Virus record (IMG/VR): IMGVR_UViG_3300023174_002543
Span: 124,001-188,000 of that record
Strand: one strand, 5' to 3'
Length of the DNA stretch: 64,000 bases
This document shows, in pieces, positions 31,064 to 46,305 of the stretch (its first letter is position 1; each line of letters begins with the position of its first letter). Made by a program: the position numbers and the translations under genes. The notes beneath the pieces were generated by a model. That model did no database searches, had not been told where the DNA came from, and saw only the letters and a program-made list of their open reading frames with translations.

Positions 31064-31169
31064 ATAGCATCGAAAGATGCTATTCTAAAACATATTTTAG
31101 TGGAACAACTGGTACTATAACTACCTACCCACACGACTCGGGAGTACTGAATGTGTTTTAGAATAGCAT
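31064..31169 (+). ncRNA. Long-stem clamp element with alternative 5' hairpin
   Basis: 19-bp stem 31077-31095/31151-31169; ATAGCAT at 31064 competes for the same ATGCTAT. Confidence 0.55.
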
Positions 31170-31233
31170 AGTGCGAGGAAAAGAATCACACCTCCTGACG
31201 GGTGAAGTACGCACTTGACTATTAAAAACATGT

Positions 31234-31563: not shown

Positions 31564-31637
31564 GCTCTCATAGTATAAAGGCATTACACTACATTGGTAA
31601 TGTAGAAACACTGGATCGTTACCAGTTGGGAGCACCA
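31564..31637 (+). tRNA. tRNA-Thr(GGT)
   Basis: CTACA-ttGGTaa-TGTAG; T-loop GATCGTT variant; CCA. Confidence 0.9.
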
Positions 31638-31705
31638 TTATAGAAACATACTCTAACTTTATTGTGACACGTGGGTTCATCCATGAAGTATGTTTCTATA
31701 ATGGT
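31634..31705 (+). ncRNA. Clamp hairpin pairing tRNA-Thr ACCA with the 5' end of the next tRNA
   Basis: Perfect 19-bp inverted repeat ACCATTATAGAAACATACT/AGTATGTTTCTATAATGGT. Confidence 0.7.
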
Positions 31706-31778
31706 TGAGTAGCATAGTGGCTAATGCACCACCTTCATACGGTGTTTATCGTCGGTTCGAGTCCGACCTCAACTACCA
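31703..31778 (+). tRNA. tRNA-Met(CAT), probably elongator
   Basis: Loop ttCATac; cloverleaf; CCA. Confidence 0.85.
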
Positions 31779-31780
31779 GA

Positions 31781-31936
31781 TTTCTGAGATAGACGATAGG
31801 TTTGAGTCCCTGCCAATCTAGCCACAGTGTGGTGTACTGTGGTAACACTACAGTATGATTGAAGCCGGTTAGTTAAACTTGCCTATACGAGACAATCATG
31901 TGAGTCCTCCCAGGAGGATAGTGTGGCTCTCAGAAA
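31781..31936 (+). ncRNA. Candidate multi-branch ncRNA
   Basis: Closing TTTCTGAGA/TCTCAGAAA; inner AGCCACA/TGTGGCT, TACTGT..ACAGTA, ATGATTG/CAATCAT, TCCT/AGGA. Confidence 0.55.
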
Positions 31937-31944
31937 CCTATATA

Positions 31945-32457: not shown

Positions 32458-32549
32458 GGAAAGTAATGCAGGTGGGATGGTCCGCCGACGAGCCTTGAAA
32501 ACTCGGTTCTCAGAAATGGGATGGGGTTCGACTCCTCTGCTTTCCGCCA
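32458..32549 (+). tRNA. tRNA-Ser(TGA) with 8/4 acceptor/T-stem structure
   Basis: GGAAAGTA/TGCTTTCC 8 bp; GGGG/CCTC 4-bp T-stem; long V-arm; G73; CCA. Confidence 0.85.
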
Positions 32550-32643: not shown

Positions 32644-32735
32644 GCCAGCGAGACTTGGTAGTCAGAGAGGTCTTATACACCTTTTAGCGCCAGATTAGCG
32701 TTCTTGAGTGAGTTCGATTCTCACCGCTGGTACCA
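32644..32735 (+). tRNA. tRNA with TAT anticodon (Ile, AUA reader), long variable arm, minimal D-loop
   Basis: GCCAGCG/CGCTGGT; GACT-tggt-AGTC; AGGT-ctTATac-ACCT; long V-arm; CCA. Confidence 0.8.
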
Positions 32736-33136: not shown

Positions 33137-33697
33137 ATGTCTGTTTTAGCACTAGATGTGTCAGGAGTTCCAAGACAATGGATCTCTAAAGATGACGCAA
33201 TCACCTATCATGCCAAAAATGCAGTAGCATGGGCACTAGGTGAAGTTGTAGCAAAGTATCGCGGTGGATTTCAAAAGTCCGGCGAGATGAGTTACATTGA
33301 ATCACAAAGTATAATTGCTATTAAAGGACATGGCTTCAATCCATATAAACATTCAACCGTTGCATTAACAAACAGAACATTGTTTGGTCGTGACCGGCAT
33401 GTGTGTGCATATTGTGGAGTACATTATCCGAACTATCATAATCTAAGTAGGGACCACATTGTCCCTAAATTTTTAGGTGGTGAAAACACTTGGATGAATG
33501 TGGTTACTGCTTGCCGTGAATGTAATAGCAAGAAAGGTCATAAGACATTGAAAGAATCACGTATGGAATTACTGTATGTGCCTTATGCACCTAATCACTA
33601 TGAAAACATGATACTGCAACAACGTAACATACTTGCGGATCAAATGGAATATCTGTTAGCAGGTGTCCCAAAACATAGTAGAATCTTACTATCGTAG
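33137..33697 (+). CDS. HNH endonuclease-domain protein
   Basis: RD.H.CAYCG, SRDHIVPK..GG.N.W.NVVTAC..CN.KK; AAGGAG RBS. Confidence 0.9.
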   Translation: MSVLALDVSGVPRQWISKDDAITYHAKNAVAWALGEVVAKYRGGFQKSGEMSYIESQSIIAIKGHGFNPYKHSTVALTNRTLFGRDRHVCAYCGVHYPNYHNLSRDHIVPKFLGGENTWMNVVTACRECNSKKGHKTLKESRMELLYVPYAPNHYENMILQQRNILADQMEYLLAGVPKHSRILLS

Positions 33698-39091: not shown

Positions 39092-39246
39092 TGTTGTTTT
39101 TTTGCAACAAACAGTTTGACAAGATATCCAACTTAGTATATAATTCATTTATGAATTGAGAAATTGATTCGCTGGGTGAATTGAAGAATTTGTTGTAATA
39201 ATACAACACAAAAAGATTTGACAATAAATCCAATTAGATGTATAAT
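39092..39246 (+). promoter_or_regulatory. Tandem duplicated sigma70 promoters, each preceded by TGTTG-N8-CAACA
   Basis: TTGACA 39116/TATAAT 39139 and TTGACA 39218/TATAAT 39241. Confidence 0.8.
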
Positions 39247-39964: not shown

Positions 39965-40825
39965 TGGGGGCATAGCCTCTTTAAGATAAGTCACGTGAGT
40001 GACCCAAAGCAGTATCCTCCTACAGGACTGCGCCAGTAATGGTCTATCTATGCAAGCCTGCTCTCACCCGCGAGGGTGCGTTCACTGATAAGACCGGTGG
40101 ATGTAACAGTAAAGCAAGTGTGTTGGAAAGAATGTCTGTTTATGTTCCCGTGAGGGTAAGACAGGCGGACAGAGAGTAACAGGTGGTGCTGACCTCAACA
40201 CAAAACCAACTTGTCAATTGGTAAGAGAAAGGGTAGTGTATTGATTCGAAGGGTCGCTCCTAAGAGTTCGTATGCAGTTTGAGTGTTTGATGGATATGTA
40301 GTAATACATATACATTGGTCGCAAAAAACTACTGATTACTCCGCGAGAGGAAAGGTACGTGGCGTGTTGTATTTTGTAGTCCAAAAGATTATGAAGCAAC
40401 TGAGACAGCACATCACAGTAGGTTGTTATAGGCTAATGGTAGGCCGATTTCCTTTTAAGAAATAGACTGTTGGTTCAACTCCAACTAACATTATAAAAAC
40501 GCAAAGTCTGTCTCGGTGGTATGTGAAAAACATCTAATACTTGAGTGGCAACACAATCAAGTCTGACGTAACTCGCAAGGTGAAATCAGTTTATGCAGGA
40601 AGTATCGTAACTACTTAGCGGTAGTGAATGGCTCTAAAGGTCAACGGTGTAGAAAGCGTAGAATAGCATATCATGTCAAGTCTAATGCCTGACTTAAAAC
40701 GGCGATGTTGGTAACAGACTAGGATATGTAGTAATACAGTCTTAGTGGAAATCAGAAGAAAGTAGGCTCGCAAGGCTTACAATAATGTCTGAGGTGTTAC
40801 TCGGTAAGCATGTATTCTCAGTGCT
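39965..40825 (+). ncRNA. Large ornate ncRNA, GOLLD-like (about 860 nt); boundaries approximate
   Basis: Long non-coding stretch inside the tRNA array with many GNRA-capped hairpins (ccc-GCGA-ggg, ccc-GTGA-ggg, gctc-GCAA-ggc, atatgta-GTAA-tacatat). Size and context match GOLLD; not tested against Rfam. Confidence 0.6.
40422..40493 (+). tRNA. CCA-less tRNA-Lys(TTT) embedded in the large ncRNA
   Basis: GGCT-aatggta-GGCC D-arm; ATTTC-ctTTTaa-GAAAT; GTTGG-ttcaact-CCAAC; weak acceptor; no CCA. Confidence 0.75.
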
Positions 40826-40829
40826 CCAC

Positions 40830-40930
40830 TTTATATAAAAACATACTGGACGCCACACAACGGCGGTCTAGCGTCAACTAGGCGATGTTACGTTTGACGA
40901 TGTAACAGATTTAGTGTGTTTCTATATAAA
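40830..40930 (+). ncRNA. Clamp element enclosing three hairpins (four-way junction)
   Basis: 17/18-bp stem 40830-40847/40913-40930; inner GACGCC/GGCGGTC, CTAG/CTAG, TGTTAC/GTAACA. Confidence 0.6.
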
Positions 40931-40934
40931 GGTT

Positions 40935-41147
40935 TTGTAAGTGTCAGCAAGAGAATGTCACGCTATAAAAGTTTCTTCGAAGGACTGATATAGTAAAAGG
41001 GGACGGGTTCAACTCCCGGTGGATCGGAAGATCCGCGCAGATTGGTTGCTAACTGGACTAGTATCCCAAGTGACGTACCGAGTCCTGGCCCGGGCTTTAT
41101 GCAAATCAGGTGAATGGTGTCAATAACGATGGTGGCACAACTTACAA
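40935..41147 (+). ncRNA. Candidate structured ncRNA (about 210 nt)
   Basis: Closing TTGTAAG-TGTC/GGCAC-aa-CTTACAA; T-loop-like GGG-TTCAACT-CCC; GGATC-ggaa-GATCC. Confidence 0.55.
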
Positions 41148-41266: not shown

Positions 41267-41504
41267 ACTCTGACCCAGAGGATGAGAAGTGATGTGACAA
41301 TCACGGGTGGTTCTGAAACGGAAAAGTTTCACACAGAAGCCATGATTGAACATGGATGTATGTGCGGTCTAACCAAACCGGCGTTAGCAATACGAGAACG
41401 GTCCCTGTCGGGAAGCGGGTGGAGGTCGTGCGTGATGTTGTCGTGGATTATTCGTCTAGTCCGATGATTGATGCGATATAATTACCGCCGAGGGATGTCA
41501 GAGC
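41267..41504 (+). ncRNA. Candidate structured ncRNA (about 240 nt)
   Basis: Closing CTCTGAC/GTCAGAG; inner GGTTCTG/CAGAAGCC, GAAAC/GTTTC, CGGT/ACCG, CGTT/AACG, TCCC/GGGA. Confidence 0.55.
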
Positions 41505-42084: not shown

Positions 42085-42161
42085 GGAAGCATAACTCAAC
42101 TGGCTAGAGTATCGGACTTTTAATCCGAGAGTTGTGGGTTCGAGTCCCACTGCTTCTACCA
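42085..42161 (+). tRNA. tRNA-Lys(TTT)
   Basis: TCGGA-ctTTTaa-TCCGA; CCA. Confidence 0.94.
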
Positions 42162-42239
42162 TATAAGAACATACTGCCTTCTGGTGAGTAAGATAACAAT
42201 GCTTACAATAAAAGTCCAAGTAGTGTGTTCCTATATGGT
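42158..42239 (+). ncRNA. Clamp hairpin sequestering tRNA-Lys ACCA
   Basis: 17/18-bp ACCATATAAGAACATACT/AGTGTGTTCCTATATGGT. Confidence 0.65.
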
Positions 42240-42251
42240 ATAAATATTTTT

Positions 42252-42473
42252 ATGATAAATGAATTTAAATTTTTATTCACAAATAAAGAAGAATATCATC
42301 GTAGGTATGATATTTGCAAAAGTTGTGATAGGTTCAATAGCTTAACCAAGCAATGTAAAGAATGTAATTGCTTTATGCCAATGAAATGTAAGATAAGCAA
42401 TTTGCCCTGCCCCTTAGGCTATTGGGCTAATGCAATAGATGTATCTGAAACAGATAATTTAGAAACGTTATAA
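42252..42473 (+). CDS. Small Cys-rich metal-binding protein (DUF6171-like)
   Basis: R...CKSC......QCKECNCFM..K......CP...W; TATAAATA 5 nt upstream. Confidence 0.75.
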   Translation: MINEFKFLFTNKEEYHRRYDICKSCDRFNSLTKQCKECNCFMPMKCKISNLPCPLGYWANAIDVSETDNLETL

Positions 42474-42551: not shown

Positions 42552-42752
42552 TTATTTTCTAAACTCAAGTTCCTTGAGTTTTTTGATTACTAAATCAAAA
42601 GTATGTGAATCATTTAATGATAGACTAGCAATTAGGGCAAGAAGGATACCCTGTTCATACAACAGTTGTTGTTCTCTTGTATTAAAATTCTTTTTATTAG
42701 AAATATATACAAGATGTTCTCGCAGGCGTTCTGCTATTTTTAATGGATCCAT
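42552..42752 (-). CDS. Small antisense hypothetical protein within the tRNA array
   Basis: Minus-strand TATAAATA 4 nt upstream of the ATG. Confidence 0.65.
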   Translation of the reverse strand: MDPLKIAERLREHLVYISNKKNFNTREQQLLYEQGILLALIASLSLNDSHTFDLVIKKLKELEFRK

Positions 42753-42848: not shown

Positions 42849-42877
42849 TTGACAAGTACTAACTAGTGCTATATAAT
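42849..42877 (+). promoter_or_regulatory. Sigma70 promoter
   Basis: TTGACA-17-TATAAT. Confidence 0.8.
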
Positions 42878-46028: not shown

Positions 46029-46032
46029 AGTA

Positions 46033-46069
46033 ATGGTCATAGTATTAATTTACTATGACCATTTTTTTT
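46033..46069 (+). terminator. Intrinsic terminator ending the tRNA array
   Basis: ATGGTCATAGTA/TACTATGACCAT followed by T7. Confidence 0.9.
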
Positions 46070-46143
46070 GTCCCTATTACCTTGACAATAACATAATTGG
46101 GTTTTTGACATTGACCTAACTATGTAGATAAATATTATAATGG

Positions 46144-46305
46144 TTTTATAAGTGTTCTATATTGCACCCTGCTGATAAGACAGGCCCTGTTTGTGAAAAA
46201 GATATTAGAATACTTATAAAAACACCCTAGCCAAACATTGCAAACATTTGAGTTTACATACTCCTAGTTCTTTAATACTTTTTAGCGCATCTAGGGTGTT
46301 TTTAT
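46144..46305 (+). ncRNA. Two overlapping, mutually exclusive long stems
   Basis: 16 bp 46144-46159/46206-46221 and perfect 15 bp 46216-46230/46291-46305 share ATAAAA; TAAATA at 46129. Confidence 0.5.

What the first reader, a model, noticed from the sequence alone, without database searches (positions are those of the whole stretch)
31634..31705. A hairpin locks the ACCA end of tRNA-Thr to the first three bases of tRNA-Met
Seen: a perfect 19-bp inverted repeat starts exactly with the ACCA of tRNA-Thr(GGT) and ends with GGT, the first three nt of the next tRNA. In the precursor it would hide the CCA end from 3' trimming and compete with the next acceptor stem. Inference: timed or conditional tRNA maturation, or protection of CCA ends from host CCA-cleaving defence nucleases until release.
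Basis: partly seen in the sequence, partly recalled or inferred. Interest (0 to 1): 0.7.

Follow-up and report, generated by a model that had tools for sequence, protein, structure and literature searches.

The report
Conserved hairpins clamping phage tRNA ends
The hairpin is real and belongs to a previously unrecognised, conserved family of RNA stem-loops in freshwater giant phages that begin exactly at the CCA end of certain phage tRNAs (mostly Lys, Glu and Gln), most likely spacers that must be cut out before those tRNAs can mature.

Summary
In detail: there is a perfect 19-bp inverted repeat at 31634-31652 / 31687-31705. It starts with the ACCA of tRNA-Thr(GGU) and ends with GGT, the first three bases of tRNA-Met. 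Simulated sequence never gave more than 15 bp.

It is not a one-off. The 367-kb phage genome holds four copies, all in the tRNA/GOLLD island. Related IMG/VR phage contigs hold about 130 more, and only two bacterial MAG contigs matched.

All asymmetric copies lie in tRNA sense. Most start at C74 of an encoded CCA and end in TGG. The helix is 18-20 bp, covaries, and usually carries one fixed A.C mismatch. Loops are 5-104 nt and mostly unrelated.

Hairpins with different stem sequences follow the same CCA...TGG rule. They directly follow 64% of tRNA-Lys(UUU) genes, and 77% of CCA-anchored stems sit behind Lys(UUU), Glu(UUC) or Gln(UUG). About 20 other anticodons never have one.

Genes downstream have no promoter of their own, so transcription reads through. 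In metatranscriptomes the hairpin is far rarer than its flanks.

Best reading: an excised processing spacer in polycistronic precursors, probably cut by host RNase III. Timed release or protection from defence nucleases remains untested. No enzyme or cleavage site is shown.

The parts
31564..31637 (+). tRNA-Thr(GGU) with encoded CCA. Its last four bases (ACCA, 31634-31637) are the first four of the hairpin's 5' arm.
   Evidence: ARAGORN; Rfam tRNA model 55.2 bits. Its T-loop is atypical, and the body differs from the Thr tRNA at the same junction in L196 and L003.
31634..31705 (+). Hairpin I2, the finding itself. 5' arm 31634-31652, 34-nt loop 31653-31686 with a small T-arm-like hairpin, 3' arm 31687-31705. 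The 19 bp are perfect.
   Evidence: Covariance model R1 scores 50.3 bits, E 1.6e-8. Nearly identical hairpin copies (loops identical or differing by 1 nt) are in L152 and L196; a related copy with the same stem core and a loop sharing only its 3' half sits behind tRNA-Asn in L073.
31703..31778 (+). tRNA-Met(CAU). Its G1-G2-U3 are the last three bases of the 3' arm.
   Evidence: ARAGORN. It is nearly identical in L196 and L003, although the hairpin before it differs.
42158..42239 (+). Hairpin I3. It starts at the ACCA of tRNA-Lys(UUU) (42085-42161). Core arms are 42162-42175 and 42222-42235, the loop is 46 nt, and it closes with TGGT. It has an A.C mismatch and a U.G wobble. A small ORF (42252-42473) and tRNA-Trp follow with no predicted promoter in between.
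   Evidence: R1 scores 67.7 bits, E 2.8e-12. Fold. The promoter/terminator scan finds the next terminator-like site at 42561-42581 and the next promoter at 42849.
40829..40931 (+). Hairpin I5, directly 3' of the GOLLD RNA match (40359-40824, ending ...GCTCCA). The loop is 65 nt and well structured. The outer stem is TTTATA/TATAAA instead of CCA/TGG.
   Evidence: R1 scores 53 bits. Orthologous hairpins behind GOLLD in L002 and L073 show compensatory outer-stem changes. RNA depth is 64-343, against up to 2e5 for GOLLD and 3e4 downstream.
31075..31171 (+). Hairpin I1, a fourth and more diverged family member, 62 nt upstream of the first tRNA of the array.
   Evidence: the repeat finder I1. R1 scores 37.9 bits, E 7e-6. 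Fold -34.6 kcal/mol, z = -6.
46216..46305 (.). Possible distant relative: a perfect 15-bp stem with a 56-nt loop, lying after the terminator that ends the array. Membership is uncertain.
   Evidence: R1 scores 22-23 bits, E 0.01-0.02 on both strands. Sequence.

Best explanation
The hairpin is one copy of a conserved family of cis-acting RNA stem-loops. They lie inside the polycistronic tRNA/ncRNA transcripts of a clade of freshwater jumbo phages.

Each copy sits directly behind a stable RNA, usually a tRNA and once GOLLD. Its 18-20-bp helix starts at C74 of the encoded CCA and closes with UGG, which is often G1-G2 of the next tRNA.

It works as an excised spacer. The helix forms co-transcriptionally and holds the upstream CCA in duplex. 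Where a tRNA follows at once, it also holds the start of the next acceptor stem. A 19-bp stem is expected to block 3'-to-5' exonuclease trimming and probably hinders RNase P.

An endonuclease therefore has to cut it before either neighbour can mature. The most likely enzyme is the host's double-strand-specific RNase III, because the helix is about two turns long whatever its sequence. After a cut, the half-duplexes would melt. Ordinary trimming back to CCA and RNase P cleavage would then finish the job.

- **Shown:** the structure, its conservation and covariation, its fixed orientation, its anchoring at CCA, read-through transcription, and its low steady-state level.
- **Inferred:** that it is cut, which enzyme cuts it, and any effect on the order or timing of maturation.
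For: 1. **Family and significance.** The core motif occurs only 3 times in the 367-kb genome, all in the tRNA island. The covariance model adds a fourth copy. IMG/VR relatives hold 126 copies, 93 of them unique.
2. **Pairing is under selection.** In an alignment of 75 copies, 91.4% of cells are paired. Thirteen of 19 pairs change on both sides. None of 500 shuffles reaches the observed value, and slid controls give 27-58%.
3. **Orientation is fixed.** The A.C mismatch lies on the tRNA-sense strand in 94 copies and in the reverse orientation in none. Sense-strand folds are 1.6-9 kcal/mol more stable than antisense folds.
4. **Anchoring at CCA is independent of stem sequence.** 59 of 93 copies start 0-1 nt after a tRNA. 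Unrelated stems behind tRNA-Glu and tRNA-Gln also run exactly from C74 to TGG. For 1147 of 1162 other tRNAs, the longest stem starting at C74 is 9 bp or less.
5. **Helix length.** Measured from C74, the helix is 18-20 positions long in 69 of 88 cases.
6. **It lies inside transcripts.** tRNA-Met begins within I2. The ORF and tRNA-Trp after I3 have no predicted promoter, and a terminator-like site follows only at 42561. Classic sigma-70 promoters and an intrinsic terminator elsewhere in the array point to host RNA polymerase.
7. **RNA data.** Metatranscriptome contigs carry a tRNA joined to a hairpin arm. Hairpin I5 has depth 64-343, against 2e4-2e5 for GOLLD and 3e4 for the RNA downstream in run X18.
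Against: - Only about 6-7% of tRNA genes in these phages have such a hairpin (72 of 1273). It is therefore not a general requirement for tRNA maturation.
- The inner 9-10 bp are far more conserved in sequence than pairing alone needs. This hints at a sequence-specific partner, which E. coli-type RNase III is not.
- No RNase III, dsRBD or other candidate nuclease was found in the phage, and the host is unknown.
- The element is essentially absent from 185,579 bacterial and archaeal species genomes, so it does not copy a host signal.
- The RNA evidence comes from assembled contigs of mixed relatives. The dip over the variable loop may reflect sequence divergence, DNA carry-over cannot be excluded, and no cleavage ends were seen.
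Confidence: 0.5

Rival explanations
1. The hairpin is a gate for particular tRNAs. It would keep phage tRNA-Lys(UUU), Glu(UUC) and Gln(UUG) as inert precursors until a specific cut releases them. These three are known in general to carry the thiolated wobble U. tRNA-Lys(UUU) is a documented target of the anticodon nuclease PrrC. Release would thus be timed, or would respond to host tRNA-targeting defence.
For: - Isotype bias is strong. Hairpins follow 36 of 56 Lys(UUU), 10 of 48 Gln(UUG) and 7 of 60 Glu(UUC) genes, and none of about 20 other anticodons.
- Counting all CCA-anchored long stems, 68 of 88 sit behind this trio, against 160 of 1226 tRNAs overall.
- Independent stem sequences converge on the same tRNAs.
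- GOLLD, which here embeds a tRNA-Lys, is also followed by a copy.
- PrrC cleavage of tRNA-Lys(UUU), and phage tRNAs acting as counter-defence, are documented in PMC10264068.
Against: - No data bear on timing or conditionality.
- Counts are inflated by shared ancestry. The loci were collected around a gene next to tRNA-Lys or by the hairpin motif itself.
- The finding itself sits behind tRNA-Thr, and other copies follow Leu, Arg, Asn, Tyr and Val tRNAs.
- A precursor-only structure cannot protect the mature tRNA.
Confidence: 0.17
2. The hairpin is a selfish or recombinational DNA module with no role as RNA. It would resemble a MITE, or the PeSL cassettes of T4-type phages. The arms would be terminal inverted repeats or short homologies that let units and neighbouring tRNA genes shuffle between co-infecting phages.
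For: - The same loop type lies behind different tRNAs in different contigs. Sixteen of 22 loop clusters have more than one upstream context.
- At the Thr-Met junction, W and L196 share the hairpin but not the Thr tRNA. L003 shares both tRNAs with L196 but has another hairpin.
- A metatranscriptome contig carries the I5 hairpin with unlike flanks.
- Arm sequence is highly conserved while the interior varies.
- An HNH endonuclease gene lies in the array.
Against: - There is no direct target duplication. The flanks are inverted complements (CCA/TGG).
- Orientation relative to transcription is 94 to 0.
- Copies within one genome have unrelated interiors, unlike MITEs.
- The outer stem covaries instead of being conserved.
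- Unrelated stems obey the same CCA-to-TGG rule.
- No integrase or Y1 transposase was found, and the only TnpB-domain match was far below threshold.
- Shuffling can be explained by gene conversion between functional copies.
Confidence: 0.15
3. The long stem is the closing helix of small RNA cassettes. The variable interior would be the product, a small structured RNA released from tRNA-driven transcripts. This would be analogous to the tRNA-pre-miRNA units of murine gammaherpesvirus 68, or to rRNAs excised from RNase III stems.
For: - Many interiors are well folded; I5's is -20.6 kcal/mol on its own.
- The tRNA-Glu-linked subfamily has a conserved 83-84-nt interior with compensatory changes.
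- Several interiors carry T-arm-like hairpins.
- Tandem hairpins exist.
- Interiors are conserved between orthologs, as with I3 and L036.
Against: - Most interiors are unrelated to each other, and one is only 5 nt long.
- RNA depth over I5's interior is 100-1000 times lower than over its neighbours. The I2 loop bins 31660-31693 have zero depth in four runs. Divergence between relatives may contribute to both.
- No Rfam family matches any interior.
Confidence: 0.1
4. The hairpin is a transcription signal: a terminator or pause hairpin for the upstream RNA, and/or a promoter in the 3' arm (TATAAT in I2).
For: The position directly behind stable RNA genes suits a terminator. The I2 3' arm contains TATAAT. 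T-rich runs lie 5-12 nt after I3 and I5.
Against: - The stem is AU-rich, the loop is 32-104 nt, and no U-tract abuts the stem.
- The scan calls no terminator or promoter at any arm.
- tRNA-Met starts inside I2, and the ORF and tRNA-Trp behind I3 depend on read-through.
- The phage uses textbook intrinsic terminators elsewhere, at 46032-46070.
Confidence: 0.03

Closest known systems
RNase III processing stems (rRNA operon stems around 16S/23S; phage T7 early-transcript sites; T4 tRNA-cluster species 1 RNA). From general knowledge.
   Same: A long duplex forms from sequences flanking or separating stable RNAs in a polycistronic transcript. It is about two helical turns long, carries a local mismatch, and is discarded after cutting.
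   Different: - Here the duplex starts exactly at the CCA of a tRNA.
- Its inner half is conserved in sequence across many phages.
- It serves only a few tRNA species.
- Cleavage by RNase III has not been shown.
Theta (HDV-like) ribozymes directly 3' of tRNAs in gut phages (PMC10879173)
   Same: A cis-acting RNA element placed directly behind selected phage tRNAs that defines or frees the tRNA 3' end. It is specific to a phage clade.
   Different: - Theta ribozymes are self-cleaving double pseudoknots behind tRNAs that mostly lack CCA; only 4.5% encode it.
- Here the tRNAs encode CCA and the element is a plain long hairpin with variable interiors.
- No HDV-type Rfam match was found.
tRNA-pre-miRNA units (TMERs) of murine gammaherpesvirus 68. 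From general knowledge.
   Same: The architecture matches: a viral tRNA-type gene followed at once by one or two hairpins of about 20 bp, whose stems are more conserved than their loops.
   Different: That system is eukaryotic, using pol III, tRNase Z and Dicer. No evidence here shows that the arms or interiors accumulate as small RNAs.
Correia, ERIC and REP-type repeated palindromes of bacteria, and PeSL cassettes of T4-type phages. From general knowledge.
   Same: These are repeated imperfect palindromes in intergenic DNA that fold in transcripts. Some are RNase III or RNase E targets and some promote modular shuffling.
   Different: - Those elements have similar interiors, target duplications or promoter parts, and occur in both orientations.
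- This family has unrelated interiors, a fixed orientation, CCA anchoring, and lies only in the tRNA island.
UGGN pairing with the tRNA NCCA end (T-box antiterminator bulge; RNase P RNA P15 loop). From general knowledge.
   Same: The same four-base interaction, UGG(U) with (A)CCA.
   Different: Those interactions act in trans on mature or nearly mature tRNA and serve for sensing or catalysis. Here the pairing is in cis, at the base of a long helix in the precursor.

Membership tests
RNase III substrate | Uninterrupted or nearly uninterrupted dsRNA helix of about two turns (about 20 bp) | tested here: met
   The helix from C74 is 18-20 positions long in 69 of 88 CCA-anchored hairpins, range 14-24. 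I2 is 19 bp and perfect.
RNase III substrate | Staggered cleavage by RNase III in vitro or in vivo | not testable with these tools
   Only assembled metatranscriptome contigs were available, and no read ends were seen.
RNase III substrate | An RNase III enzyme is available during infection | tested here: inconclusive
   None is encoded by the phage: PF14622, PF00636 and PF00035 gave no match. The host is unknown. Most bacteria have rnc (general knowledge).
Intrinsic (Rho-independent) terminator | Short GC-rich stem with a small loop, followed at once by a U-tract, with transcripts ending there | tested here: not met
   The stem is AU-rich, the loop is 34-65 nt, and no U-tract abuts it. The scan does not call it. 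tRNA-Met starts inside it.
HDV-like / theta ribozyme | Nested double-pseudoknot core, matched by HDV-type covariance models, behind CCA-less tRNAs | tested here: not met
   The Rfam scan at E up to 1 found no ribozyme family at any of the hairpins. The tRNAs encode CCA.
MITE / transposon remnant | Terminal inverted repeats | tested here: met
   Arms of 14-19 bp.
MITE / transposon remnant | Direct target-site duplication, similar interiors among copies, and both orientations | tested here: not met
   The flanks are inverted complements (CCA/TGG). Interiors of the four copies in this genome are unrelated. Orientation is 94 to 0.
MITE / transposon remnant | A cognate transposase or recombinase | tested here: inconclusive
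   No tyrosine integrase or Y1 transposase was found, and TnpB gave only a 15-bit sub-threshold match. Other transposase families were not searched.
Integron attC site | An IntI integrase and R/L core sites (RYYYAAC / GTTRRRY) in an imperfect hairpin | tested here: not met
   No PF00589 match. The arms do not fit the core-site consensus on reading the sequence.
Bacterial Y RNA (YrlA-like) | A long closing stem plus a tRNA-like domain, with a Ro60/Rsr (TROVE) partner | tested here: not met
   No TROVE match and no Rfam hit. T-arm-like hairpins occur in only some interiors.
GOLLD RNA (is hairpin I5 part of it?) | Lies within the positions of the Rfam RF02032 model | tested here: not met
   The model match ends at its last position (416 of 416) at 40824. 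The hairpin starts at 40829. The same holds in L002 and L073.

The most novel reading that the evidence does not exclude
Two bold readings remain open.

1. The hairpins are a phage-specific release device for the thiolated-wobble tRNAs (Lys UUU, Glu UUC, Gln UUG), of which tRNA-Lys(UUU) is a documented target of anticodon-nuclease defence. The tRNAs would be stored as locked precursors and freed by a sequence-specific factor that reads the conserved inner helix and its A.C mismatch.
2. Alternatively, or in addition, they form a tRNA-driven cassette system that expresses small RNAs. This would be a bacterial-virus counterpart of herpesvirus tRNA-pre-miRNA units.
Probability: 0.15. Interest if true: 0.85.

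Novelty: new variant of a known kind. Interest (0 to 1): 0.62.

Why it matters
- **tRNA maturation in phages.** Phage tRNA arrays are common, but how their precursors are matured is poorly known beyond T4 and the recently described theta ribozymes. This family is a second, structurally different cis-element that sits exactly on phage tRNA 3' ends. It is conserved across more than a hundred copies.
- **Isotype bias.** It is selective for Lys(UUU), Glu(UUC) and Gln(UUG). tRNA-Lys(UUU) is a documented anticodon-nuclease target, and this trio recurs in discussions of tRNA-targeting defence.
- **GOLLD RNA.** It also marks the 3' boundary of GOLLD RNA. That gives a handle on how this RNA of unknown function is cut from its transcript.
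- **Practical use.** It provides a searchable motif and a covariance model for annotating these phages.
- **Testability.** A simple, testable processing substrate is now available.

Tried and rejected
- **Cultured phages.** Megablast and blastn of the region against GenBank phages found no relatives beyond tRNA-level matches. The nearest cultured relative by a neighbouring protein is Ralstonia phage RsoM2USA at 39% identity. I did not examine its tRNA region.
- **Rfam.** At E up to 1, no family matched any hairpin.
- **Neighbouring proteins.** The phage proteins next to the hairpins are DUFs (DUF7448, DUF6171, DUF2452), which gives no mechanistic lead.
- **Phage-encoded partners.** I looked for RNase III, dsRBD, Ro60, integrase, Y1 transposase and TnpB and found none.
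- **Strand inference.** Inferring the working strand from wobble pairs alone fails. The sense strand has the A.C mismatch and the antisense strand has C.A mismatches, in about equal numbers. The strand inference therefore rests on fixed orientation, CCA anchoring and fold energies.
- **Tracking the discriminator.** The idea that the stem tracks the discriminator and position 72 is rejected as real covariation. Positions +4 and +5 are mostly T and a purine whatever the tRNA.
- **Interiors as decayed tRNAs.** This is not supported. There is no tRNA-model hit, and the median length is about 48 nt.

Full report
**1. The observation**

The repeat finder reports arms at 31634-31652 and 31687-31705. 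They are 19 nt long, 100% complementary, and 34 nt apart.

ARAGORN places tRNA-Thr(GGT) at 31564-31637 and tRNA-Met(CAT) at 31703-31778. The stem therefore begins with the ACCA of the first tRNA and ends with G1-G2-U3 of the second.

In 100 first-order Markov simulations of the window, the longest perfect inverted repeat with a loop of 150 nt or less was 15 bp. The minimum-free-energy fold of the 215-nt precursor contains both tRNAs and the complete hairpin. The tRNA-Met acceptor stem is reduced by three pairs.

**2. The setting**

The window lies in a 367,104-bp IMG/VR virus record from a freshwater metagenome. It carries 33 tRNA genes, all on the + strand, between 31234 and 46028. It also carries a GOLLD RNA at 40359-40824 (201 bits) with a tRNA-Lys embedded in it.

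Textbook sigma-70 promoters (12 of 12 matches at 39116, 39218, 42849 and 46312) and a classic intrinsic terminator at 46032-46070 point to transcription by host RNA polymerase.

**3. The hairpin is one of a family**

- Two other inverted repeats in the island share the stem core TATAGAAACATACT / AGTATGTTTCTATA.
  - I3 (42154-42243) starts in the ACCA of tRNA-Lys(UUU).
  - I5 (40829-40931) starts 5 nt after the end of the GOLLD match.
- The core occurs nowhere else in the genome.
- A covariance model built from 75 copies finds a fourth member at 31075-31171 (E 7e-6) and a doubtful one at 46216-46305.
- Loci fetched from IMG/VR, through a neighbouring protein and through the motif itself, hold 126 copies, 93 of them unique.
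- A scan of one genome for each of 185,579 bacterial and archaeal species found only two hits. Both are short freshwater MAG contigs, and one of them is a 1.5-kb array of nine tRNAs.

The element therefore belongs to a phage clade, not to bacterial chromosomes.

**4. Anatomy of the family**

*Position.*
- When oriented by the neighbouring tRNAs, 59 of 93 unique copies begin 0-1 nt after an ARAGORN tRNA.
- 74 are preceded by CCA, 78 are followed by TGG, and 71 have both.
- In 27 copies the next tRNA begins within 3 nt, so TGG supplies its G1-G2.
- Tandem hairpins with no tRNA between them keep the CCA/TGG closure (L167, L099).

*Pairing.*
- On the 75-copy alignment, the 19-pair helix is paired in 91.4% of cells.
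- Thirteen pairs change on both sides.
- No shuffle out of 500 reaches the observed values, and slid controls reach 27-58%.
- The outer part covaries freely. Examples are TATA to TATT/AATA, TAGA/TCTA and TATG/CATA, and TACT/AGTA and ATTCT/AGAAT behind GOLLD in L002 and L073.
- The inner 9-10 bp (AAACAYAYT / AGTRTGTTT) are nearly invariant.

*The mismatch and orientation.*
- One position is deliberately unpaired. It is A.C in 61 of 75 copies, and elsewhere U.U or C.C.
- The A.C orientation is on the tRNA-sense strand in 94 copies and reversed in none.
- Sense-strand folds are more stable than antisense folds for all four copies in the window.

*Loops.* Loops are 5-104 nt long, with a median near 48. 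They are mostly unrelated, often folded, and sometimes end in a T-arm-like hairpin.

**5. The CCA rule does not depend on the stem sequence**

For every unique tRNA with an encoded CCA, I searched for stems that begin at C74. Besides the family, 15 tRNAs have stems of 14-21 bp. Some have quite different sequences, yet they run exactly from CCA to TGG. One example is CCATTTGTTTTGTTGACGTA ... TGCGTCAGCAAAACAAATGG behind tRNA-Glu, with a conserved 83-84-nt interior.

The remaining 1147 of 1162 tRNAs have 9 bp or less. Helix length from C74 is 18-20 positions in 69 of 88 cases.

This recurrence argues that the working object is an RNA helix of about two turns abutting the tRNA 3' end. It argues against a DNA repeat as the working object.

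**6. Which tRNAs**

| tRNA | unique genes directly followed by a hairpin |
|---|---|
| Lys(UUU) | 36 of 56 |
| Gln(UUG) | 10 of 48 |
| Thr(GGU) | 4 of 26 |
| Glu(UUC) | 7 of 60 |
| Leu(UAG) | 5 of 46 |
| about 20 other anticodons | 0 |
| all tRNAs | 72 of 1273 |

Counting all CCA-anchored long stems, 68 of 88 sit behind Lys(UUU), Glu(UUC) or Gln(UUG), against 160 of 1226 tRNAs overall. The nominal Fisher p is 1e-48.

That p value is inflated by shared ancestry. The loci were also collected near a tRNA-Lys-linked gene or by the motif itself, although every isotype was counted within the same loci.

**7. Transcription and RNA evidence**

- tRNA-Met starts inside I2.
- Behind I3 come a small ORF (42252-42473) and tRNA-Trp. 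There is no predicted promoter before them, and a terminator-like site lies only at 42561-42581.

The hairpins are therefore read through.

In freshwater metatranscriptomes (Logan contigs, relatives included):
- One contig carries tRNA-Thr followed by a family 5' arm.
- Another carries a family 3' arm followed by tRNA-Met.
- Over I5 the summed depth in run X18 is 64-343. It is 2e4-2e5 over GOLLD and about 3e4 over the RNA that follows.
- The I2 loop bins 31660-31693 have zero depth in four runs.

This fits a spacer that is transcribed and then discarded. However, the variable loops of relatives will not align, and DNA carry-over cannot be excluded. This is supporting evidence, not proof.

**8. 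Modularity**

- Sixteen of 22 loop-sequence clusters occur behind more than one kind of upstream RNA.
- At the Thr-Met junction, W and L196 share the hairpin and tRNA-Met but not the Thr tRNA.
- L003 shares both tRNAs with L196 but has a standard-type hairpin with an unrelated 45-nt loop.

Units are therefore exchanged, probably by recombination or gene conversion through the conserved arms and tRNAs.

I found no integrase or Y1 transposase, and only a far sub-threshold TnpB-domain match. There is no target duplication. Orientation is fixed. These points speak against a transposon.

**9. Interpretation**

Three properties are those of a processing stem:
- a helix of about two turns,
- a position inside polycistronic precursors of stable RNAs,
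- removal from the products.

The rRNA operons and phage T7 supply the classic examples, and RNase III is the usual enzyme (general knowledge).

A 19-bp helix that begins at C74 is expected to stop the 3' exonucleases that normally trim to CCA. It can stack on the acceptor stem next to the RNase P site. An endonucleolytic cut should therefore come first, which imposes an order on maturation.

Conditional release and protection from defence nucleases do not follow from it.

Two facts keep confidence moderate:
- Few tRNAs carry the hairpin.
- The inner helix, with its fixed mismatch, is conserved beyond what pairing needs. This suggests a sequence-reading partner that I could not identify.

The phage encodes no RNase III, dsRBD or Ro60.

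**10. Comparison and novelty**

The nearest published analogue in phages is the theta (HDV-like) ribozyme directly behind tRNAs of gut phages. It frees the 3' end of mostly CCA-less tRNAs (PMC10879173). The present element shares that position and its selectivity. It is otherwise different: a plain hairpin, behind tRNAs that encode CCA, with no ribozyme signature.

I found no description of it in Rfam or in the literature searches. I rate it a new variant of a known kind, namely a cis-acting processing stem, with an unusually precise relation to the CCA end and an unexplained isotype bias.

Noticed in passing
window 40359-40824 (and about 40250-40358): A GOLLD RNA (Rfam RF02032, 201 bits) with a tRNA-Lys(UUU) embedded at 40422-40493. 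That tRNA lacks an encoded CCA and is followed by TTATAAAAACG, which resembles the hairpin 5' arm. Summed depth in one metatranscriptome reaches up to 2e5.
   Followed up: partly
window 40932-41100: An unannotated, GC-richer stretch begins GTTTTGTAAGTGTCAGCAAGAGAA right after hairpin I5. Its metatranscriptome depth is very high (about 3e4 in X18). In relatives the same start sequence follows tRNA-Met or tRNA-Lys directly. It has no Rfam match and is probably an unknown abundant ncRNA.
   Followed up: partly
window 41328-41481: Another stretch with high RNA depth (up to 7.9e3 in X17) lies between tRNA-Ser and tRNA-Cys. It overlaps only a doubtful 70-aa TTG ORF and may be a further ncRNA.
   Followed up: no
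window 31779-31944: The 166-nt spacer between tRNA-Met and tRNA-Arg has a 12-bp closing inverted repeat (31778-31789 / 31928-31939). RNA contigs of a relative cover it. It may be another small structured RNA.
   Followed up: no
L014 5635-5760; also L021, L030, L104: A second hairpin type lies behind tRNA-Glu(UUC). It has a 20-bp stem from CCA to TGG with an unrelated sequence. Its 83-84-nt interior is conserved and shows compensatory changes, for example GGG/CCC, GTG/CAC and GAG/CTC around TAAACGTCAA. This is a candidate small RNA.
   Followed up: partly
window 31564-31637: tRNA-Thr(GGU) has an atypical T-loop (GGATCGTTACC). It differs throughout from the Thr tRNA at the same junction in close relatives, although the hairpin and tRNA-Met behind it are the same as in L196.
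   Followed up: partly
window 32644-32735 and 32458-32545: ARAGORN calls a 92-nt tRNA-Ile(TAT), and Rfam gives weak tRNA-Sec-like matches to it and to the stretch just upstream. These may be long or unusual tRNA-like genes.
   Followed up: no
window 33137-33697: An HNH endonuclease gene (phrog_16726, E 1.5e-29) lies inside the tRNA array.
   Followed up: no
L011 7509-7928: A related phage contig encodes a tmRNA of the betaproteobacterial type (Rfam RF01850, 118 bits). This hints that the hosts of this clade are Betaproteobacteria.
   Followed up: no
L204 (MAG contig CAZQNP010000058.1, 1478 bp): A contig binned to Candidatus Planktophila consists of nine tRNA genes plus a family hairpin behind tRNA-Lys(UUU). 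It looks like a phage tRNA array that was mis-binned.
   Followed up: partly
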